Positions 1 through 44,105 of a stretch of 64,000 nucleotides of DNA are shown piece after piece. The DNA comes from Octopus bimaculoides (Eukaryota), in the NCBI RefSeq assembly GCF_001194135.2, contig NC_068983.1, forward strand, positions 115,600,632-115,664,631. Reading direction: 5' to 3'. The position numbers and the translations under genes are program-made. Below the pieces are notes generated by a model, which was given only the letters and a program-made list of their open reading frames with translations, did not search any database and was not told where the DNA came from. The number at the start of each line of letters is the position of its first letter. Positions within the stretch are counted from its first letter, which is position 1.

Positions 1-1527
1 CAAATTTGTATTTACAATCAGTTCCTTTCCATTGATGGTTAGGCACTTCCAGAAACTAACTGGTACAGTGTTATTATTAGATTTCTTGATATATTCATTC
101 AACTGAATTTGAAGCCAACGAAGAGAACAATTACACACCAGTTTATTATTGTTGAGGTCTATATTGAAATATTCCTTTTCTGGCCAGGTGAAATTATTAA
201 AAACACATTCATCCACAACTTGGAGCTGGTTGTTACTGAGTTTAATAGACTCTAAAGTGTTTTGTAGACCTTGAAATGCACCTTCCTCTAAAGTCTCTAT
301 TTTGTTGTCATTTAGCTTTATGACTTTTAGCTTTGAGTTCTTTTCAAATGCAAATGCAGCAATTACTGCTAGATTACATTTGGAAAGATCCAAGATTTCT
401 AAATGTGGTAATGTTTGAATTGCTGTCCAAAGATCTTTATTATTAAAACTATTGCCTTTTAATGATAACTTTTTCAATGTTCCACTGGTATTTTCTAACC
501 ATTTTATTTCCATAGTTCCTTTTAGATTTTGATTATCCAAATATAAAATTTCTAAGAGAGGCACTTCAGTCATTGTGGTGGCTTCAATGATCAATTGATT
601 TCTATTTAAAAATAGTTCTCTAAGATTATTTAAACCATTTAAATATGTTTTTCGCAATTTGGTAAGTTGGTTATTTCTCACAGACAAGGTGTTTAGTGTA
701 TTCATATTTTGAAATATGTCACCTGATAGACTTTTAATTCTATTGTTATCTAACTTGAGGGTTTCAAGTTTTGAAAGGTTTTTAAAATGTTTCAGATGAT
801 CATGTGTGATTTTGTTTGAACTTAAGTCTAAATGTTGCAGCTTCTTTTTTACATTTTCTAAATTTCCCATTGTTATGTCTGTGATTGCATTATTACTCAC
901 ATCAAGATACTGTATGTTGAGCAGATGCTCGAAAGCTTCTGGATGTAGCATTTTTGCCAGCTTATTATTTTTTATAGTAAGATGAGTTAAATTCTGGAAA
1001 TGTGCAAATGTATTTATGTTGATATCACAAATTTTATTATTTATTAAAGAGAGTTTTGTCAATTTAGTTAGCTTGTTAGAAGTAAAATTGTTTAAATTTT
1101 GGTTCATATAGAAATTTTCAATTTCAAGAGTTTCAAGGTTGTACAGGTTTTGAAGGGCTGTAAAATCAACTAGTTCTGTTGTATCTGTTGTTGATAGCTC
1201 TAAGCTTTTCATGAAATCTTCTTGTCCACCAAATGCATTTTTGTCAATTACTGTTAATGGATTGTCATATATTGATAAGTGTTTAATTTGAGTACCATTG
1301 AAAACATTCTCCTGTAGAGAGTGTAGATTTGTTCTGGTAAGATATAACATATACGTGCCATTGAGCTGTTCAAAGTTTAAGCGTTTGTTATGTAAATCAA
1401 TGTATTCACAGATAATTTTGAAGTTATTGATATTACAAGCATGTTTGATGTTAATTATTTCATTGAGAGCTAAAGCAGCTACCTGGAATTGTAATATCCA
1501 AATTATATGCAGTTGGTTGAATTTCAT
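1..1527 (-). CDS. LRR receptor copy A: signal peptide, LRRNT, ~16 LRRs, LRRCT; 3'-partial (runs off left edge)
   Basis: Manual translation is stop-free from ATG at 1527-1525 to base 1 (509 codons): MKFNQLHIIWILQFQVAALA...ACNINNFKIIC...LxxLxLxxN repeats...NNKLVCNCSLRWLQ. Missing from the ORF track, probably because there is no in-window stop. Clear paralog of copy B. Confidence 0.92.
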   Translation of the reverse strand, partial: MKFNQLHIIWILQFQVAALALNEIINIKHACNINNFKIICEYIDLHNKRLNFEQLNGTYMLYLTRTNLHSLQENVFNGTQIKHLSIYDNPLTVIDKNAFGGQEDFMKSLELSTTDTTELVDFTALQNLYNLETLEIENFYMNQNLNNFTSNKLTKLTKLSLINNKICDININTFAHFQNLTHLTIKNNKLAKMLHPEAFEHLLNIQYLDVSNNAITDITMGNLENVKKKLQHLDLSSNKITHDHLKHFKNLSKLETLKLDNNRIKSLSGDIFQNMNTLNTLSVRNNQLTKLRKTYLNGLNNLRELFLNRNQLIIEATTMTEVPLLEILYLDNQNLKGTMEIKWLENTSGTLKKLSLKGNSFNNKDLWTAIQTLPHLEILDLSKCNLAVIAAFAFEKNSKLKVIKLNDNKIETLEEGAFQGLQNTLESIKLSNNQLQVVDECVFNNFTWPEKEYFNIDLNNNKLVCNCSLRWLQIQLNEYIKKSNNNTVPVSFWKCLTINGKELIVNTNL

Positions 1528-4500: not shown

Positions 4501-6730
4501 GTAAGCTGACATAAGAAACCATTGTCAGTTGTTACCAGTCAGTTTCATCAGAATGACAAGTGCTTAGGTGTCACAAATACCAACCTTTACCTGAAATATT
4601 TTTTGTTCATTGTTCATTGATTAAATAAAGTATATAATGAACATAGTAATAATAAATTTTCTCGAATCTTTGAGAACAAAGCCTTCCTGATGTTTACAAC
4701 GAATGATCGTAAATTTATTCATACTAATATAGTCAAAGGATACATTGTGATTTACATCACTAGTGTAACAGGGCACTCTGGGTGTAAAATGGAACATAAA
4801 AAAACAAAACTTTCATTAGTTATAAAGAAAATATGCTGAAAGCTGATCTGCTGGGTGAAACAAGATGTAGGGCAGATAAGTTGGTAGCAATTGGAGAGTT
4901 TGATATTATTTTAAAATTTTATTTTAAGAAGGGACAGTGCCCATAACCTAAACTGGGAAAGTTGATGTACTTGGTATTCATTTTGAATTTCCACAATTTG
5001 ATGTATGTACAGAAAATGAGCTGGGTGCTTCAAAGGGTTTATAGTTCAAGTAAAGGTTTGAGTGAAATGATTAGAATTGTGTTTTGTGGTGAGACACAGT
5101 AGGAATGATCAAAGAGAGGCAAATGTATCCAACTTTGTTGGGGCACATGTACAGATTGGTTATTTAAAGCAAGCAAAAACCATTTGTAGTTATGCAGAAG
5201 GGACCACTATTATGTTGGTTAGAGGATGTTTCTTAATGACAGTTTACTAATCAGCCAGATGGTTTTTTTTTGTGGGGGTATGGTCTAGAATATTTGAGTG
5301 TATTTAGCAGCTATACCATTCCAACCATGTGAGCTGGCCTGAAGCACATTTGTGGTCAGAACATTCCAGTCTGATCACAGTGTCTTTGTTTGTTTTTTCT
5401 TTTTTTTTTTGGTATTGTTTATATAAGAGTATATTATCTTTCTTGAATATTTAAAGATAGTAAGACAGGGAGCTGAGAAATTTGGCTGCTATTTCAAGCA
5501 GGACAAGCATTAGTGTAGAAACACCCTTGTTGGTTTGAGTCTATGTGTTTGACCTCTACACAATGTATGATATGTGATTATGTAAAATCTGCTGTTTTGT
5601 TTTGCTTTGTTTTCTTGCGAAGAGATTGGGGTTAGGCATGATTCACCTATTCCATGCTAGACTTAATATAATTTTTTGCAGGCTAGTGTTGTTTCTTTAT
5701 GTTCATCAAATGTGATGCCTAGGAATACTAAGTATGTTTGTGCATTGTCCTGCTTTCTGAACTATGTAGTTTACACGTGAATGTTGTCCAAGTATGGTAA
5801 GCAATTCCTGGTGTTTATATTTCTTTTTGTGTTATGTGAATATGTGTGAATGATCTTTGCTCTTAATGGTGAAAAGGAAGATGGGGAATTTAGTAAATGT
5901 TGTTATTAATCTATTGTAAGACATGAAGGAGTAGTTTGAAAGAGTCTGTTACTAATACAAGATGGTCCAAATAACCACATAGGGTATTCCTCACTGACTT
6001 GGCTCATTTCACTTTTAGTTAATTGAACTGGTGGCCATAAATGACAAGAATCATTGTCACTATTTAAACAAAGATTTCATCTTCTACTCTCATTTCTCTC
6101 TCAGAACGTGAGCTTTCTCCCCTAACCCCTTCTATTCCTTCAGTGATGATTAAAGCATCTTCAAAAGCAGCATTTGTCATTTATCGAGGATGTGTATTGC
6201 AAATGTTGCAGTGGATGTTGTGTGTCCAGGATAATTATTTTATGCTCTAAGTAACAAGACTTTCATTAATACACCCAGGTTGCAAGGAACAATTCCGGCA
6301 CTATTTAATGGACTGAATAAAGTTGTCATTATTTACTGTGTGGTATATACCATAACTGTAAATATATAACTGTCCAAGTGTCCTCTTAATCATTATTATC
6401 ATCATAATCTTTTTGTAAAGTTCTATGTTGGCATCAGTTAAATGAGTCCTTATGGTAGACATAATTTTATGAATGACTTTAGGAACTTTTTTTTATTATT
6501 AGCATTACAATTTCCTGTCAGGCTGCTTCTAATTCTTTCATCATATATACACTATTTGTAACTTCTATTAGCACTTTACTGTTTCATCCAATACATCTCT
6601 GTATCTAAGCTCGAAAATCAACACAATACAATGTTTTCATTTTTAATGGAAAGTCTACATATAAACATGGACAGTCAAATAGAAATTTTAATATATAAAG
6701 ACTATTATATGCAGTTCTATATCTGGGTTT

Positions 6731-8360
6731 CCTGCACTGATGCTGTTTTTCTGGTAAGACAGCTGCAGGAGAAATACCTAGCCAAAGATAGATCTCTGTA
6801 CCTGGCTTTCGTTGACATGGAGAAAGCCTTTGACAGGGTCTCCCGATCCCTTATCTGGTGGTCAATGAGGAAACTAGGGATAGATGAATGGTTAGTGAGA
6901 GCTGTGCGAGCCATGTACAGGGACACTGTCAGTAAGGTGAGGGTTGGCAACGAGTACAGTGAAGAATTCCGGGTAGAGGTAGGGGTCCACCAAGGTTCAG
7001 TCTTAAGCCCCCTTTTATTTATCATAGTCCTCCAGGCAATAACAGAGGAATTCNNNNNNNNNNNNNNNNNNNNNNNNNNNNNNNNNNNNNNNNNNNNNNN
7101 NNNNNNNNNNNNNNNNNNNNNNNNNNNNNNNNNNNNNNNNNNNNNNNNNNNNNNNNNNNNNNNNNNNNNNNNNNNNNNNNNNNNNNNNNNNNNNNNNNNN
7201 NNNNNNNNNNNNNNNNNNNNNNNNNNNNNNNNNNNNNNNNNNNNNNNNNNNNNNNNNNNNNNNNNNNNNNNNNNNNNNNNNNNNNNNNNNNNNNNNNNNN
7301 NNNNNNNNNNNNNNNNNNNNNNNNNNNNNNNNNNNNNNNNNNNNNNNNNNNNNNNNNNNNNNNNNNNNNNNNNNNNNNNNNNNNNNNNNNNNNNNNNNNN
7401 NNNNNNNNNNNNNNNNNNNNNNNNNNNNNNNNNNNNNNNNNNNNNNNNNNNNNNNNNNNNNNNNNNNNNNNNNNNNNNNNNNNNNNNNNNNNNNNNNNNN
7501 NNNNNNNNNNNNNNNNNNNNNNNNNNNNNNNNNNNNNNNNNNNNNNNNNNNNNNNNNNNNNNNNNNNNNNNNNNNNNNNNNNNNNNNNNNNNNNNNNNNN
7601 NNNNNNNNNNNNNNNTTGAGGGAACCTGTGAAAGAGGTAGACCCAGGAAGACCTGGGATGAGGTGGTGAAGCATGACCTTCGAACATTAGGCCTCACTGA
7701 GGCAATGACTAGTGACCGAGACCTTTGGAAATGTGCTGTGTGTGAGAAGACCTGGCAAGCCAAGTGAGACCATAAACCATGGCCTATGTCAGGGGTGTAT
7801 GTCAGCCCACTTATGTGTACCTTTCCTTCATTGGACACTAAACTCTGCTTGCGAAGACCTGTTGAGGCAAGTGAAATCGAAATCGAATCAAATTCGATGA
7901 CTGGCACCCATGCCAGTGGAGCGCTAAGAGCACCATCCGAGCGTGATCATTGCTAGAGTAACTGTCTGGCTTCCTCACCAGTGGCGCATAAAAAGCACCA
8001 TTTGAGCATGATTGTTACCAGCGTTGCCCTACTGGCACGTAAAAAAACATTCGAGCGAGGTCGTTGCCAGTGCCGCTAGACTGGCTCTTGTGCAGGTGGC
8101 ATGTAAAAAACACCATTTGAGCATGGCTGTTGCCAGTACTGCCTGACTGGCCCTCGTGCCGGTGGCATGTAAAAGCACCCACTANNNNNNNNNNACTGGC
8201 CCTCGTGCCGGTGGCATGTAAAAGCACCCACTACACTCTTGGAGTGGTTGGCGTTAGGAAGGGCATCCAGCTGTAGAAACTCAGCTAGATCAGACTGTAG
8301 CCTAGTGCCGCCATCAAATTGTTCAACACATGCTAACATGGATAGTGGACATTAAACGAC
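6731..8360 (+). mobile_element. RTE-clade LINE, 5'-truncated (RT domain, gap, C-terminus, tandem-repeat 3' UTR)
   Basis: LAFVDMEKAFDRV...GVHQGSVLSPLLF and RGRPRKTWDEVVKHDL...DRDLW; the 3' UTR has ~55-nt tandem units and the ggacattaaacga tail shared with many fragments in the window. Confidence 0.9.
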
Positions 8361-13453: not shown

Positions 13454-15906
13454 TTATATATCACTTTCTCTCAGTTCGAGTGTGGTATAAATAATTACAT
13501 TTTTATTGTTTAAAATGTTACCATTTTCATTCTGTGGAAGACATGGTAAAGGTCTTTGTGCATGATTCAAATGTGATCCCCTTTGTGCAGGTATATTATT
13601 TATAGGTAATGATTGGTCTTGGAAAGTACTTTTCTTACCACCATTCCTTATATTTTCTTTATTGTCTAATGCTTTATCTTGCACAGTTTGAGGGTTCTGA
13701 ATTTCTTCATAGTTTTCACCTAGTATAAAGCTAGGGTTATCCAAATATTGATAGCTTCCTGCAGAAAGCTGTTGATCTGGCTGAAGTTGACCATGAGATA
13801 TTACAGAAACGGTTGGCTCTTTAGTTTCATTTGGTTTTTTTCTTAAATAACGTTTAGTTTTTGGTGTTAAATTGACTTGTGTCCTTGCTGAATTTGTAGG
13901 TTCTTCATATATGTGTTTCTTATTGTTTTTATGTCTTCTGTATAATACATAGCATAAAATAAGAAGGATTAAAAGTGCAACAAATACACCAATTCCAAGT
14001 CCTATCTCTAATGTATTTTTGTTGCTAGTNNNNNNNNNNNNNNNNNNNNNNNNNNNNNNNNNNNNNNNNNNNNNNNNNNNNNNNNNNNNNNNNNNNNNNN
14101 NNNNNNNNNNNNNNNNNNNNNNNNNNNNNNNNNNNNNNNNNNNNNNNNNNNNNNNNNNNNNNNNNNNNNNNNNNNNNNNNNNNNNNNNNNNNNNNNNNNN
14201 NNNNNNNNNNNNNNNNNNNNNNNNNNNNNNNNNNNNNNNNNNNNNNNNNNNNNNNNNNNNNNNNNNNNNNNNNNNNNNNNNNNNNNNNNNNNNNNNNNNN
14301 NNNNNNNNNNNNNNNNNNNNNNNNNNNNNNNNNNNNNNNNNNNNNNNNNNNNTTTCAAGTAATTAACAGATGAAATGATATCATTAGATTTCTTAATAAA
14401 CTCTTGCACCTGAACTTGAAGCCAATGAAGAGAACAATTACACACCAGTTTGTTATTGTTGAGGTCTATATTGAAATATTCCTTTTCTGGCCAGGTGAAA
14501 TTATTAAAAACACATTCATCCACAACTTGGAGCTGGTTGTTACTGAGTTTAATAGACTCTAAAGTGTTTTGTAGACCTTGAAATGCACCTTCCTCTAAAG
14601 TCTCTAGTTTGTTGTCATTTAGCTTTATGACTTTTAGCTTTGAGTTCTGTTCAAATGCAAATGCAGGGATTACTGCTAGATTACATTTGGAAAGATCCAA
14701 GATTTCTAAATGTGATAATGTTTTAATTGCTGTCCAAAGATCTTTATTATTAAAACTATTGCCTTTTAATGATAACGTTTTCAATGTTCCACTGGTATTT
14801 TCTAACCATTTTATTTCCATAGTTCCTTTTAGATTTTGATTATCCAAATATAAAATTTCTAAGAGAGGCACTTCAGTCATTGTGGTGGCTTCAATGATCA
14901 ATTGATTTTCCTTTAGAGATAGTTCTTTAAGATTACTTAAACCATTTAAATGTGTTTTTTGCAATTTAGTAAGTTGATTATTTCTCACAGATAAGGTTTT
15001 CAGTTTATTCATATTTTGAAAAATGTCACCTGATAGACTTTTTATTTTGTTGTAATTGAAGTTGAGGGTTTCAAGTTTTGAAAGGTTTTTAAAATGTTTC
15101 AAATGATCTTCTGTGATTGTGTTTAAACTTAAGTCTAAATGTCGAAGGCTGTTCTCAATATTTTGAAATGCAAATTCATCAACTTTTGAGATAGAGTTTT
15201 CTATTAAATACAAATTTTCCAGTTTTCTGTTTTCTTGCAAATTTCCCATACTTATTTCTTTGATAGCATTTTCAGTCATGTCAAGATGTTGTAAGTTGGG
15301 TAAATATTTGAAGGTTTGTGGAAGTGGTATTTTATCCAAGTTATTTTTTGTAATGTGAAGTTGAGTTAAATTCCCCAAATGTACAAAAGCTTTTGTGCTG
15401 AAGTATTGAATTTTATTATTTATTAAAGAGAGTTTTGTCAATTTAGTTAGCTTGTTAGAAGTAAAATTGTTTAAATTTTGGTTCATATAAAAATGTTCAA
15501 TTTCAAGAGTTTCAAGATTATACAGGTTTTGAAGGGCTGTAAAATCAACTAGTTCTGTTGTATTTGTTGTTGATAGCTCTAAGCTTTTCAAGAAATCTTC
15601 TTGTCCACCAAATGCATTTTTGTCAATTACTGTTAATGGATTGTCATATATTGATAAGTGTTTAATTTGAGTACCATTGAAAACATTCTCCTGTAAAGAG
15701 TGTAGATTTGTTCTGGTAAGATATAACATATATGTGCCATTGAGCTGTTCAAAGTTTAAGCGTTTATTATTTAAATCAAAGTTTTTGCAGATAATTTTGA
15801 AGTCATAAATACTACAAGCGTGTTTGATGTTAATTGTTTCATTGAAAGCTAAAGCAGCTACCTGGAATTGTAATATCCAAATTATATGCAGTTGGTTGAA
15901 TTTCAT
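13454..15906 (-). CDS. LRR receptor copy B: type I membrane protein (signal peptide, LRRNT, ~17 LRRs, LRRCT, gap, TM, 161-aa tail)
   Basis: ORF 15927/15906 to the gap at 14030-14352 gives the ectodomain. After the gap, the frame starting at 14029 reads TSNKNTLEIGLGIGVFVALLILLILCYVLYRRHKNNKKHIYEEP...GSYQYLDNPSFILGENYEEIQ...QRPLPCLPQ...VIIYTTLELRESDI* and joins ORF-track 13454-13744 without a stop. The in-frame upstream ATG at 15927 is an alternative start. Confidence 0.88.
13940..14005 (-). other. Transmembrane helix of LRR copy B
   Basis: IGLGIGVFVALLILLILCYVLY followed by basic RRHK stop-transfer residues. Confidence 0.85.
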
Positions 15907-15934
15907 TTTGGAATGCGTAATTTCCATGTGTCAC

Positions 15935-15952: not shown

Positions 15953-16839
15953 GTTTTCAAGGATGCAAGTAGTATATATTTCATGTTGTATGTGTTAACG
16001 ATAGGGCCACCTGACAATTACAAATATGACTTATTATAAAACTTCAATGCGAAGCTGCTTTTAGTATATAAAAAATTTTGTACATAGTGATGAATTTACA
16101 ATATCAATATCACAAGCAGATGAGAAGCATTTGACATGGATGCCTGAACCGCCAGATCTCATAATTTCATATGTCTGCTTCTTCTGTGGCAGGTGTTTGT
16201 TCACTGCATGGCACCCAAATCTCACTGCCAACAATATATAGAATGAAAGTGACTCTTCTTTTACTGATGTCATAAATAACAAGCAGTCACTTTAAAAATA
16301 AATATCAGTGACATAAGCAGTATATGCCAAAACTAGAAATCATTATATAGGTGAAGTCCAAGCCTGATAAGATTGTCTATGAAGTAAATCAACCAATATC
16401 AATATAAGTAATCATCATAAACCACGAATCCATAAACACTTTCAACTTTATGAAAATGAAGGGCAACTGAGAATTACAAAATCCCAGGACATAAAAAATT
16501 CACAAGCAAGCATATCAAATAAACATTTCCACCATTAGCTACAAAACGGATATCTCTATGGTTTTGGAACTTGGGCAGTAGCATCAGTGTTAACAGCTTT
16601 AAAAGCATAAATGCTGCTTGGGAATCAGTTGAAATGAGCAGGAGTGAGCATATGTCCATTATGCCAATACCTGCTTATAACTACAAACATCAGTCTCAAA
16701 TTAAACAAATTAGTATTAACTTATTGTTACAAAATGGTCTCTATAAAACAAATATATANNNNNNNNNNNNNNNNNNNNNNNNNNNNNNNNNNNNNNNNNN
16801 NNNNNNNNNNTATATATATATATATATATATATATGGTA

Positions 16840-18555: not shown

Positions 18556-18594
<39 letters not shown>

Positions 18595-22272: not shown

Positions 22273-24033
22273 ATGATGAAATTACTCGAGTAGTTTGTAT
22301 TGTGTATCTCGTCTCAAGCTCTGATTTTCTGCCTATTCTTGTTGGAACCTTTGATATGGAGTATCAAAATTTTAATCCCTTTCACACTTATAAAATGTCA
22401 AGCAAACTTAATAATTTGTCATTACCATTTTAGCTGGGAGACCAAACTGATAGTTTGGTAACCCACTAAAATAAACATTAAAAATTGAAAGGAGAAAATA
22501 AACAGCTTTGCAAGTTTAATTCAGTGTTTATTAAAGAAGAGAGGTGAAAAATTTAAGAAGCGTTTTGTTAGAATATACATGTCTGTGAAGAGACATAAAC
22601 AAAAATAGCAAAAATCTACCATACCAAAAGAACTGGTAATACATACATTACAAGTGTTCTATGAAGAGAACATAAGATTGCTGCATAATTCACCATGAAT
22701 GTGAAACGACATTAAACATTGTATAAGGTAAATGAAGGTTTCTGTAGGAACGCTAAGTCATATTCACTTACTGAGTTTAATTGTGCAAGGATGAATCATG
22801 ATGTTGTCGTCAGCGTTAGATGCAGTAAGAGCTGGTAGTGGTGATGTTGGCAGTGATGAATTTCGTTGTCCTAATGTGGAGAAAGCGACCAATAGCTTCC
22901 TGGGGGCAAATGCAAGCTAGACTTCTTAAGCGGAGAAAAACTGATCTGTTTAAGGAAATTGCTGGGCTCCATTGTGATAGGTAGAAACAGCAAGCAATGT
23001 AAGATATGGCCTGGACCGTGATTACCAGCATGAACATCAAACTTCAAAAGTAGTTAACCATTTAATGGTTTTAGTGAATTTATACAGAAAAAGTAAGCAT
23101 TATACTGTCTAGCATAAATAAAAGTCAGCTTCATTATATATTTTCTGTAAAACCTNNNNNNNNNNNNNNNNNNNNNNNNNNNNNNNNNNNNNNNNNNNNN
23201 NNNNNNNNNNNNNNNNNNNNNNNNNNNNNNNNNNNNNNNNNNNNNNNNNNNNNNNNNNNNNNNNNNNNNNNNNNNNNNNNNNNNNNNNNNNNNNNNNNNN
23301 NNNNNNNNNNNNNNNNNNNNNNNNNNNNNNNNNNNNNNNNNNNNNNNNNNNNNNNNNNNNNNNNNNNNNNNNNNNNNNNNNNNNNNNNNNNNNNNNNNNN
23401 NNNNNNNNNNNNNNNNNNNNNNNNNNNNNNNNNNNNNNNNNNNNNNNNNNNNNNNNNNNNNNNNNNNNNNNNNNNNNNNNNNNNNNNNNNNNNNNNNNNN
23501 NNNNNNNNNNNNNNNNNNNNNNNNNNNNNNNNNNNNNNNNNNNNNNNNNNNNNNNNNNNNNNNNNNNNNNNNNNNNNNNNNNNNNNNNNNNNNNNNNNNN
23601 NNNNNNNNNNNNNNNNNNNNNNNNNNNNNNNNNNNNNNNNNNNNNNNNNNNNNNNNNNNNNNNNNNNNNNNNNNNNNNNNNNNNNNNNNNNNNNNNNNNN
23701 NNNNNNNNNNNNNNNNNNNNNNNNNNNNNNNNNNNNNNNNNNNNNNNNNNNNNNNNNNNNNNNNNNNNNNNNNNNNNNNNNNNNNNNNNNNNNNNNNNNN
23801 NNNNNNNNNNNNNNNNNNNNNNNNNNNNNNNNNNNNNNNNNNNNNNNNNNNNNNNNNNNNNNNNNNNNNNNNNNNNNNNNNNNNNNNNNNNNNNNNNNNN
23901 NNNNNNNNNNNNNNNNNNNNNNNNNNNNNNNNNNNNNNNNNNNNNNNNNNNNNNNNNNNNNNNNNNNNNNNNNNNNNNNNNNNNNNNNNNNNNNNNNNNN
24001 NNNNNNNNNNNNNNNNNNNNNNNNNNNNNNNNN

Positions 24034-43214: not shown

Positions 43215-44105
43215 AGAAACTTTTACTTTTTCCTGCTCTGGCAAGAAGATCATCTCTGGTAATCTGGTATGCTGATGACATAGTGCCCTTCACAGACAAC
43301 ACAAAAGATGCTGAACATTTACTCCATCTCCTGGAAAATGTTGCTGCTAATATAGGACTATATGTGAATGAAAAGAAGACAGAGTTTATTACCTTGAACA
43401 CAACACGTGAAATCAGAACCATCAAACAGAGGCCCTTGAGAAATGTCAACAAGTTTACTTACCTAGGTAGCAATATCATGTCCACTGAAAAAGATATTAA
43501 ATCTTGGGTTGCTAAGGCTCGGGCAGCTATAGACAGTCTTAGAACAATATGGAAGTCAACCCTACCAGATAAATTGCAGAGACAGTTCTTCAGAGCAGTT
43601 GTTGAATCTGTGCTTGTATATGGATCTCCAACTTGGACTCTCACCAAGAGACTCAGGTGCCTAATATGACAGAATAAGTTGAGCGGTCTTGTAAAGGCTT
43701 CGACATTAGTCTATTTAATATCTATTACACTAGTATTAAATACATTTCTTTTATCAAGGCACCCTAGCGAGTTCCCCTTCTAGGCACAAGTATGGGCAAG
43801 ATTGTTTATGGAAGAGTATTAGTCGCCCATGCATACATGCCTTGCCTCTCCATGCCACCGATATTAGCAGTGCTCAACATCTCTTGGAGGGAGCACCCAA
43901 CAAAACAATGGTTATACAGGAATGTACCAACTCTCTCATCAACTATCCAAGAGCGGAGGTTGAGGTTTGCAGGCCACTGCTGGAGAAGTAAAGAAGAACT
44001 TGTGAGTAATTTGTTGCTGTGGACATCATATCATGGTACGACAGTGGCTGGAAGACCACGGAAGACATATATACAATAGCTTGCAGATGTTGGATGTTGA
44101 AAATA
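43215..44105 (+). mobile_element. Second RTE-like LINE fragment (YADD through C-terminus), interrupted by a ~200-bp insert
   Basis: WYADDIV...IGLYVNEKKTEF...FTYLGS...FFRAVVESVLVYGSPTWTLTK and RRLRFAGHCWRS...GRPRKTYI. Confidence 0.88.

What the first reader, a model, noticed from the sequence alone, without database searches (positions are those of the whole stretch)
13454..14029. TIR-less LRR receptor whose tail combines an ITAM-like pair, a Src-type SH3 ligand and a C-terminal ITIM
Seen: after the gap, the frame from 14029 gives a TM helix and a 161-aa, otherwise low-complexity tail. It contains IYEEP (13898-13912), YQYL-x10-YEEI (YEEI at 13700-13711), RPLPCLP (13535-13555) and IIYTTL (13478-13495, 7 residues from the end). 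Established: pYEEI is the optimal Src-family SH2 ligand, RPLPxLP is the class I Src SH3 ligand, [SIVL]xYxx[IVL] is the ITIM that recruits SHP/SHIP phosphatases, and ITAMs are YxxL/I pairs (usually 6-8 residue spacer, here 10). Inference: a Toll-like ectodomain wired to Src/SHP tyrosine signalling instead of TIR/MyD88, i.e. a candidate invertebrate immune, allorecognition or adhesion receptor class. I cannot confirm novelty without a search.
Basis: partly seen in the sequence, partly recalled or inferred. Interest (0 to 1): 0.88.

Follow-up and report, generated by a model that had tools for sequence, protein, structure and literature searches.

The report
Mollusc LRR–FN3 receptor with docking tail
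The octopus gene is a real single-pass leucine-rich-repeat receptor without a TIR domain. It belongs to an undescribed mollusc-wide family whose disordered tail carries two strongly conserved short motifs, a tyrosine motif and an RPLPxxP proline motif, that look like a Src-kinase docking site.

Summary
The window is Octopus bimaculoides. The TM and tail after the gap belong to the LRR ORF before it. A tandem paralogue in the same window (P0002) and two Argonauta genes are uninterrupted single-exon genes. Their layout is signal peptide, about 19 LRRs, LRRCT, Thr-rich stalk, FN3, TM, then a tail of about 150 aa. The gap therefore hides about 170-210 codons, including an FN3 domain.

An exhaustive profile search found the same architecture and tail in a gastropod, oysters and other molluscs. 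No member has a TIR domain. Across 17 tails, the two best-conserved blocks are SAGSYQ[YF]L and RPLPxxP. This pairing resembles the bipartite Src SH2/SH3 site of p130Cas.

IYEEP and YEEI occur only in octopods. There, YQY[LF]-x10-YE.[IV] keeps an exact 10-residue spacer in 4 of 5 tails. The ITIM consensus is not enriched: 5 of 17 tails against 3.3 expected. It appears to be a local form of a conserved distal tyrosine motif. The tail also ends in a PDZ-ligand-like ESDI.

This is a phosphotyrosine/SH3 docking receptor of FLRT-like architecture. An immune role is unproven.

The parts
14353..15927 (-). 5' part of the single coding exon of gene B: start codon (ATG 15925-15927, or the ATG at 15904-15906 that matches the start of the relatives), signal peptide, N-terminal cap, about 19 LRRs and the start of LRRCT (CNCSLHWL)
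   Evidence: ORF and translation. Pfam LRR_8 E=6e-50. 100% identical to UniRef A0A0L8HK46 of O. bimaculoides.
14030..14352 (.). Assembly gap (323 N). It is inferred to hide the rest of LRRCT, a Thr/Ser-rich stalk and one FN3 domain, about 170-210 codons.
   Evidence: Gap listing. Alignment with intact P0002, P0004 and P0005. FN3 fold of the P0002 equivalent: AF2 pLDDT 88.7 and all top PDB Foldseek hits are FN3. Pfam fn3 scores above its cut-off in P0127, P0130 and P0134.
13940..14011 (-). Transmembrane helix LEIGLGIGVFVALLILLILCYVLY
   Evidence: Identical in paralogue P0002, where AF2 gives a helix at residues 665-694.
13457..13939 (-). 161-aa cytoplasmic tail, predicted disordered (stop codon 13454-13456)
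   Evidence: Tail of paralogue has pLDDT <40.
13898..13912 (-). IYEEP juxtamembrane tyrosine motif. Octopod-specific, and lies in a gene-conversion tract shared with paralogue A.
13835..13861 (-). Basic block KTKRYLRKK (family motif KR[YF].KK)
   Evidence: Tail alignment A3; coordinates.
13790..13810 (-). VSVISHG block (family motif V.VIS.G)
13733..13768 (-). LSAGSYQYLDNP, the most conserved block of the family (SAGSYQ[YF]L). The conserved YxxL tyrosine is present in 16 of 17 tails and is proposed as the SH2 docking site.
13700..13711 (-). YEEI, exactly 10 residues after YQYL. This is the second half of an octopod-specific ITAM-like pair and fits the optimal Src-family SH2 ligand consensus.
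13535..13555 (-). RPLPCLP, class I SH3 ligand consensus. R[PK]LP occurs in 17 of 17 tails and RPLPxxP in 15 of 17.
13478..13495 (-). IIYTTL, a distal tyrosine that matches the ITIM consensus. It is the local form of the family's distal tyrosine motif (Y.[ED][IV] or YVN).
13457..13468 (-). C-terminal ESDI, which fits the class I PDZ-ligand consensus ([ST]-x-hydrophobic at the C-terminus). Other cephalopod members end in ETTI, ETQI, ETKI or ETEI.
1..1527 (-). Tandem paralogue A: codons 1-509 of P0002 (848 aa). The gene runs off the left end of the window.
   Evidence: tblastn 100% identity. DNA identical to L004.
24035..24382 (-). 5'-truncated third copy (fragment C, equivalent to residues about 59-181) that abuts gap 23156-24033. 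No homology continues beyond the gap.

Best explanation
Gene B (window 13454-15927, minus strand) is one of two tandem, intron-less paralogues. Both lie antisense inside the ATG2 gene. They belong to an uncharacterised, mollusc-wide family of type I membrane proteins. The layout is signal peptide, about 19 LRRs, LRRCT, Thr-rich stalk, FN3, TM helix, then a disordered tail of about 150 aa.

Proposed mechanism (inferred, not shown). The ectodomain binds an extracellular or cell-surface ligand. The tail acts as a docking scaffold built from short linear motifs. The family-invariant RPLPxxP constitutively binds the SH3 domain of a Src-family kinase or another SH3 adaptor. The family-invariant SAGSYQ[YF]L tyrosine, once phosphorylated, binds an SH2 domain. 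Together they form a bipartite Src-docking site like RPLPSPP + YDYVHL of p130Cas. The docked kinase then phosphorylates the remaining tyrosines. In this octopus copy those are YEEP, YEEI (10 residues after YQYL) and the distal IIYTTL. In most other members they are YxN and Y.E[IV]. These sites recruit further SH2 proteins. The E[ST]x[IV] C-terminus may tether the receptor to a PDZ scaffold.

What is shown: gene structure, architecture, absence of TIR, the conservation pattern and predicted tail disorder. What is inferred: phosphorylation, the identity of binding partners, and the biological process (adhesion, neural or immune).
For: Family and architecture. Intact relatives P0002, P0004 and P0005 are single-exon genes in the same order inside ATG2 in O. 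bimaculoides and Argonauta. One relative, the A orthologue, lies inside ATG2 in O. sinensis. An exhaustive HMM search of 1.84 billion representatives returned 17 proteins. About 13 are LRR-FN3-TM proteins, including ones from Haliotis rubra and Saccostrea. FN3 is supported by Pfam and by AF2 plus Foldseek. No member has a TIR domain. The tail is predicted disordered.

Conservation. SAGSYQ and RPLPCL are the top conserved windows across 17 tails. R[PK]LP occurs in 17/17 tails against 0.11 expected. SYQ occurs in 16/17 against 0.7. Y.[ED][IV] in the last 16 residues occurs in 12/17 against 0.09. A class I PDZ-type end occurs in 8/17 against 0.42. The octopod pair YQY[LF]-x10-YE.[IV] keeps a fixed spacer length with variable spacer sequence in 4 of 5 tails.

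Precedents. p130Cas binds Src SH2 and SH3 through YDYVHL and RPLPSPP (PMC8542790). The FLRT1 tail is tyrosine-phosphorylated in an FGFR1- and SFK-dependent way (PMC2858647). The SH3 class I, pYEEI and ITIM consensus definitions are established knowledge.
Against: There is no expression, phosphorylation or binding data. Between O. bimaculoides and O. sinensis the paralogue-A tail evolves at dN/dS of about 1.0, against 0.33 for the LRRs, and the O. sinensis copy carries a frameshift. Most of the tail is therefore weakly constrained, and some copies may be decaying. The Argonauta orthologue of this gene has lost even the SYQ tyrosine (SHQ) and keeps only 2 tail tyrosines. O. sinensis A has lost the second half of the PxxP motif (RPLPS-HNN). 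All YxxΦ motifs are also consensus AP-2 sorting signals. Family counts are not phylogenetically independent. The FN3 domain and stalk of gene B itself are unseen because they lie in the gap.
Confidence: 0.55

Rival explanations
1. Immunoreceptor reading, as proposed by the first reader. An LRR pattern- or allo-recognition receptor of haemocytes signals through Src-family kinase, an ITAM-like pair (to a Syk/Shark-type kinase) and a C-terminal ITIM (to an SHP2/Corkscrew-type phosphatase). This would be analogous to Draper-I/Draper-II in Drosophila or LRRC25 in mammals.
For: The pair YQYL-x10-YEEI is present, with its spacing conserved in 4 of 5 octopod tails. IIYTTL and LNYITV fit the ITIM consensus in this gene and its Argonauta orthologue. 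Invertebrate SFK-ITAM-Syk and ITIM-Corkscrew signalling exists in Draper (PMC4503800). LRRC25 is an LRR-TM protein with an ITIM-within-ITAM (PMC6107485). The central LRRs differ between paralogues while their flanks are homogenised.
Against: The ITIM consensus is at chance level in the family (5/17 vs 3.3 expected), with P=0.24 in this tail. The ITAM spacing of 10 is outside the canonical 6-8. The Argonauta orthologue lost both ITAM-like tyrosines. There are only two paralogues plus a fragment, not a diversified multigene family. No expression data exist. The FN3 domain and the PDZ-type end are more typical of adhesion molecules.
Confidence: 0.12
2. Neuronal or epithelial adhesion molecule of the FLRT, SALM, NGL or ELFN type. 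Its tail is used mainly for PDZ/SH3 scaffolding and for endocytic sorting (YxxΦ, NPxF), not for phosphotyrosine signalling.
For: The LRR-FN3-TM architecture. The E[ST]x[IV] C-termini in cephalopod members, including ETQI in P0122 and ESDI here. From my own knowledge, vertebrate NGLs end in ETQI and bind PSD-95. YQYL, YEEI and YTTL all fit YxxΦ, and NPSF is present at 13727-13738.
Against: The PDZ-type end is absent in 9 of 17 members. The near-invariance of the SYQ tyrosine together with an optimal Src-type RPLPxxP is more specific than a sorting signal would need. No homology to FLRT, SALM or NGL was detected. FLRTs are reported only in vertebrates (PMC10084454).
Confidence: 0.25
3. A decaying or functionless duplicate. 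The octopod-specific motifs are chance products of a fast-evolving, low-complexity tail.
For: Tail dN/dS of about 1 between Octopus species and a frameshift in the O. sinensis A copy. A truncated third copy lies in the window. The Argonauta B orthologue lost most tyrosines.
Against: The ORF is open on both sides of the gap. LRR dN/dS is 0.33. The A/B pair and its gene order are retained since the Octopus-Argonauta split. The conserved blocks persist across molluscan classes. The relative P0121 recurs in 11 transcript-sized contigs from several sequencing runs.
Confidence: 0.08

Closest known systems
FLRT1-3 (vertebrate fibronectin leucine-rich transmembrane proteins)
   Same: Type I membrane protein with an LRR domain plus caps, a linker, one FN3, a TM helix and a short unstructured tail. 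The FLRT1 tail tyrosines are phosphorylated in an FGFR1- and Src-family-dependent manner (PMC2858647).
   Different: About 19 LRRs here against 10 in FLRTs. No detectable sequence homology in the FN3 domain or the tail. FLRTs are reported only in vertebrates (PMC10084454). The SAGSYQ[YF]L and RPLPxxP blocks were found only in mollusc proteins in these searches.
p130Cas/BCAR1 Src-binding region (RPLPSPP + YDYVHL)
   Same: An optimal class I RPLPxxP SH3 ligand is combined with a Y-x-Y-hydrophobic tyrosine motif in one disordered segment. In Cas these bind Src SH3 and SH2 (PMC8542790).
   Different: Cas is a cytosolic adaptor, not a receptor. The order of the two motifs is reversed and they are 29-90 residues apart here. 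This is an analogy, not homology.
LRRC25/MAPA and RP105/CD180 (vertebrate TIR-less LRR membrane proteins)
   Same: An LRR ectodomain and a single TM helix without TIR. LRRC25 carries an ITIM-within-ITAM and a YENM motif (PMC6107485). RP105 is among the structural neighbours of the ectodomain.
   Different: LRRC25 has few LRRs and no FN3. RP105 has an almost absent tail. There is no specific sequence relationship.
Drosophila Draper-I/II (CED-1 family)
   Same: An invertebrate receptor whose tail uses Src42A, an ITAM (to Shark), an ITIM (to Corkscrew) and NPxY (PMC4503800).
   Different: Its ectodomain is built of EGF repeats. There is no RPLPxxP block and no homology.
Toll/TLR family
   Same: A long LRR solenoid with cysteine caps and a single TM helix. 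The TLR3 and TLR8 ectodomains are among the Foldseek neighbours. Automated names in Argonauta say 'toll-like receptor 4'.
   Different: No family member has a TIR domain. An FN3 domain is inserted before the TM helix. LRRC15, IGFALS and LGR4/5 score better than the TLRs by sequence.

Membership tests
Toll/TLR | Cytoplasmic TIR domain | tested here: not met
   Pfam scans of the window tail, of the C-terminal halves of P0002/P0004/P0005, and of 8 full-length members found no TIR.
Toll/TLR | LRR ectodomain specifically related to TLRs rather than to other LRR proteins | tested here: inconclusive
   The best PDB sequence hits are LRRC15, IGFALS and LGR4/5, followed by TLR13 and TLR3. Foldseek neighbours mix TLR3/8, LGR4/5, LINGO-1, LRIG1 and RP105. 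No phylogeny was made.
ITIM-bearing inhibitory receptors | [SIVL]xYxx[IVL] in the cytoplasmic tail | tested here: met
   IIYTTL at 13478-13495. However, P=0.24 by shuffling.
ITIM-bearing inhibitory receptors | Motif conserved as an ITIM in orthologues and paralogues | tested here: not met
   At this position only Argonauta P0004 (LNYITV) keeps it. The consensus appears anywhere in 5 of 17 tails against 3.3 expected.
ITIM-bearing inhibitory receptors | Phosphorylation-dependent recruitment of SHP-1/2 or SHIP | not testable with these tools
   Needs biochemistry.
ITAM-bearing activating receptors | YxxL/I-x(6-8)-YxxL/I | tested here: not met
   The spacer is 10 residues. The exact 10-residue spacing is conserved in 4 of 5 octopod tails and is absent outside octopods.
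ITAM-bearing activating receptors | Binding of a tandem-SH2 Syk-family kinase | not testable with these tools
   Needs biochemistry.
Class I SH3 ligands (Src type) | [RK]xxPxxP, with RPLPxxP as the optimal Src SH3 ligand | tested here: met
   RPLPCLP at 13535-13555. R[PK]LP occurs in 17/17 tails and [RK]xxPxxP in 16/17 against 3.1 expected. Actual SH3 binding was not tested.
FLRT family | LRR, then FN3, then TM architecture | tested here: met
   Shown for the paralogue and orthologues. In gene B itself the FN3 domain lies in the gap and is inferred.
FLRT family | Sequence homology to FLRTs and 10 LRRs | tested here: not met
   There are about 19 LRRs. No FLRT appeared among the PDB sequence hits shown. 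The stalk-FN3-TM-tail profile search returned no protein that could be identified as an FLRT: the relatives that carry a source name are molluscan and most hits are unnamed.
Class I PDZ ligands | [ST]-x-hydrophobic at the C-terminus | tested here: met
   The tail ends in -S-D-I. 8 of 17 family tails fit, against 0.42 expected. Binding was not tested.
Unnamed mollusc LRR-FN3 family (P0002, P0004, P0005, P0121-P0134) | SAGSYQ[YF]L and RPLPxxP blocks in the tail, behind an LRR-LRRCT-stalk-FN3-TM ectodomain | tested here: met
   Both blocks are present in the window tail. The ectodomain is 57-79% identical to octopod members.

The most novel reading that the evidence does not exclude
Octopods have rebuilt the tail of an ancient molluscan LRR-FN3 receptor into a true immunoreceptor-style switch. 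On top of the ancestral bipartite Src-docking site, they added a long-spacer ITAM-like pair (YQYL-x10-YEEI, for a Syk/Shark-type kinase) and, in the B lineage, a C-terminal ITIM (for an SHP2/Corkscrew-type phosphatase). This would be a lophotrochozoan LRR-based SFK-ITAM/ITIM recognition receptor that evolved independently of vertebrate and insect systems.
Probability: 0.12. Interest if true: 0.8.

Novelty: new variant of a known kind. Interest (0 to 1): 0.42.

Why it matters
It corrects a public gene model that lacks the transmembrane helix. It replaces misleading automated names ("toll-like receptor 4", "IGFALS", "LRIG2") with a defined family: a mollusc-wide LRR-FN3 receptor with two near-invariant tail motifs. 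Those motifs make a concrete, cheap-to-test prediction, namely bipartite docking of a Src-family kinase. Receptor-proximal tyrosine signalling is almost unstudied in lophotrochozoans. If the octopod-specific ITAM-like and ITIM additions prove functional, this would be an independent origin of immunoreceptor-type wiring on an LRR scaffold.

Tried and rejected
1. Word-indexed homologue searches with the tail alone and with the 17-tail alignment returned nothing. Proteins known to contain these sequences are in that database, so I treat these as false negatives, not as evidence of absence.
2. Pfam on the tail gave only sub-threshold TM-type noise.
3. The tail profile against PDB sequences gave nothing.
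4. Literature searches for cephalopod LRR+ITIM, for the UniProt accession, and for octopus LRR+FN3 found no description of this family.
5. I considered that the post-gap contig might belong to another paralogue. I rejected this because B-type LRR and B-type tail features co-occur in Argonauta P0004.
6. I considered a third functional copy at 24035-24382. I rejected this because it is 5'-truncated, preceded by stop codons, and has no continuation beyond the gap.
7. I could not obtain the O. sinensis or O. vulgaris orthologue of gene B. The fetched O. sinensis locus reaches only 10 kb upstream of paralogue A.
8. Which family tyrosine is homologous to the IIYTTL tyrosine remains ambiguous. It aligns with the YVN tyrosine in MAFFT. 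It equals the last Y.E[IV] tyrosine if counted from the C-terminus.
Full report
**Observation**

The window is from Octopus bimaculoides. The LRR ORF is 100% identical to UniRef A0A0L8HK46. On the minus strand an ORF runs from 15927 to the edge of an N gap (14030-14352, 323 N). It encodes a signal peptide, a cysteine cap, about 19 LRRs and the start of an LRRCT.

After the gap, the frame from 14029 encodes a 24-residue TM helix (13940-14011) and a 161-aa tail ending at the stop codon 13454-13456.

Composition-preserving shuffles of the tail give these post hoc probabilities:
- RPLPxxP: P about 2e-4.
- Two YE[ED] motifs: P about 1e-3.
- YxxL/I pair with a 6-12 residue spacer: P about 0.03.
- ITIM consensus: P = 0.24.

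**Is the tail joined to the LRR exon?**

This cannot be read across the gap, but three relatives settle it.
- P0002 (848 aa) is a tandem paralogue, here called A. Its first 509 codons are window 1527..1.
- P0004 (915 aa) and P0005 (839 aa) are two Argonauta hians genes.
- All three are uninterrupted single-exon genes with LRR, LRRCT, Thr-rich stalk, a β-sandwich domain, TM and tail.
- All lie antisense inside the ATG2 gene. In Argonauta the B-type gene precedes the A-type gene, the same order as B then A in the window. The fetched O. sinensis locus holds only the A orthologue, also inside ATG2.

The window gene (B) is the orthologue of P0004. They share an extra LRR, TPKTKRY.RKK, RPLP.LP and a distal Yxx[LV] placed 10 residues from an SD[IA] end. 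The gap therefore hides about 170-210 codons.

The public model A0A0L8HK46 splices across the gap and omits the TM helix, so it is an artefact.

**The hidden domain**

The membrane-proximal 112 residues of P0002 fold with pLDDT 88.7 into a seven-strand sandwich, and all of its top PDB neighbours are FN3 domains. Pfam fn3 scores above its cut-off in three distant members.

The full-length model shows a confident LRR solenoid, the FN3 domain, a TM helix and a tail with pLDDT 24-39, which indicates disorder.

**The family**

An exhaustive profile search with stalk, FN3, TM and tail against 1.84 billion representatives found only 17 proteins. About 13 of them have the same architecture and a recognisably homologous tail. 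Named members come from Haliotis rubra, Saccostrea cucullata and another species whose name is cut off in the record. Two others look like cephalopod transcripts, and P0121 recurs in 11 contigs of 3-6 kb from several runs. None has a TIR domain.

The ectodomain's best solved relatives by sequence are LRRC15, IGFALS and LGR4/5, followed by the TLRs. By structure they are a mixture of TLR3/8, LGR4/5, LINGO-1, LRIG1 and RP105. "Toll-like" therefore describes the shape only. The architecture is FLRT- or ELFN-like, with no detectable homology to those families. FLRTs are reported only in vertebrates (PMC10084454).

Motif columns are more conserved than the rest: 0.61 vs 0.35 in octopods and 0.41 vs 0.21 across molluscs.

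Counts across the family against shuffled expectations:

| Motif | Tails with motif | Expected by chance |
|---|---|---|
| R[PK]LP | 17/17 | 0.11 |
| SYQ | 16/17 | 0.7 |
| [RK]xxPxxP | 16/17 | 3.1 |
| Y.[ED][IV] in the last 16 residues | 12/17 | 0.09 |
| Class I PDZ-type C-terminus | 8/17 | 0.42 |
| ITIM consensus | 5/17 | 3.3 |

So the ITIM is not enriched.

IYEEP and YEEI exist only in octopods and are missing in P0004, the orthologue of this very gene. IYEEP of B also lies in a tract that is 100% identical at the DNA level to paralogue A. The two genes are conversion mosaics with divergent central LRRs and distal tails.

In favour of an ITAM-like reading, YQY[LF]-x10-YE.[IV] keeps exactly 10 spacer residues, of variable sequence, in 4 of 5 octopod tails from both paralogue lineages.

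Gene B has none of the YxN motifs present in 15 of 17 members. The homology of IIYTTL is ambiguous: it corresponds either to the YVN tyrosine or to the last Y.E[IV] tyrosine.

**Constraint**

For paralogue A, comparing O. bimaculoides with O. sinensis, dN/dS is 0.33 in the LRRs, 0.55 in the stalk, 0.81 in FN3 and 1.04 in the tail. The O. sinensis copy has a frameshift, which is either an assembly error or decay. The tail as a whole is weakly constrained, as expected for a disordered region in which only short motifs matter. It also means that some copies may be degenerating.

**Mechanism (inferred)**

The two invariant blocks mirror the bipartite Src-binding site of p130Cas, in which RPLPSPP binds SH3 and YDYVHL binds SH2 (PMC8542790).

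I propose that the family tail docks and activates a Src-family kinase. The kinase then phosphorylates the other tyrosines for SH2 adaptors. In cephalopods, the E[ST]x[IV] end adds PDZ anchoring.

Precedents are FLRT1 tail phosphorylation (PMC2858647), Draper ITAM/ITIM signalling in an invertebrate (PMC4503800) and LRRC25, an LRR protein with an ITIM-within-ITAM (PMC6107485). Whether the receptor serves immunity, adhesion or neural wiring is open.

**Verdict**

This is a new variant of a known kind: an LRR-FN3 single-pass receptor with a tail of short linear motifs. It defines an undescribed mollusc-wide family. Interest is moderate.

Noticed in passing
window 13774-14368 (model P0001 = UniRef A0A0L8HK46): The public 628-aa gene model joins ...DIISS directly to PDQQLSAG... 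across the assembly gap. It therefore lacks FN3, the TM helix and the juxtamembrane tail. This is an annotation artefact.
   Followed up: yes
window 1-1527 (-) and 13454-15927 (-): Paralogues A and B are mosaics. Some tracts are 97-100% identical at the DNA level (N-terminal LRRs, C-terminal LRRs, TM plus juxtamembrane). These alternate with tracts of 13-75% identity (central LRRs, distal tail). The pattern suggests gene conversion that spares the putative ligand-binding and signalling parts. The two Argonauta genes show the same pattern.
   Followed up: partly
window 24035-24382 (-): A third, 5'-truncated LRR copy (equivalent to residues about 59-181), 97% identical to A and B. It is preceded by stop codons and abuts gap 23156-24033. 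Nothing related follows the gap. It is a pseudogene fragment or a scaffolding artefact.
   Followed up: yes
whole window; L001-L004: The LRR genes lie antisense within the ATG2 (autophagy-related 2) gene span. This holds in O. bimaculoides and Argonauta hians for both genes, and in O. sinensis for the one gene fetched, so it is a conserved nested-gene arrangement.
   Followed up: partly
L001 11290-11356: The O. sinensis orthologue of paralogue A changes reading frame here, which is why its model is annotated as only 455 aa. This is either an assembly indel or a real pseudogenisation. The downstream frame still encodes FN3, TM and tail.
   Followed up: partly
P0002 residues 661-700 vs L001: Across the 40 TM and juxtamembrane codons, O. 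bimaculoides A and O. sinensis A differ by dN 0.128 with dS 0. This is unexplained. The sample is small, and conversion from B in O. bimaculoides may contribute.
   Followed up: no
window 6631-7053 (+) and 43283-43669 (+): ORF fragments that look like reverse transcriptase (FVDMEKAFDRV...), probably retrotransposon remnants. Several assembly gaps are flanked by (TA)n or (TATA)n microsatellites, for example at 16811-16835 and 18560-18594.
   Followed up: no
tool behaviour: The word-indexed protein search returned no hits for the tail or the tail alignment, although identical sequences (P0001, P0002, P0005, P0121...) are in that database. Null results from it for low-complexity queries should not be trusted.
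   Followed up: yes
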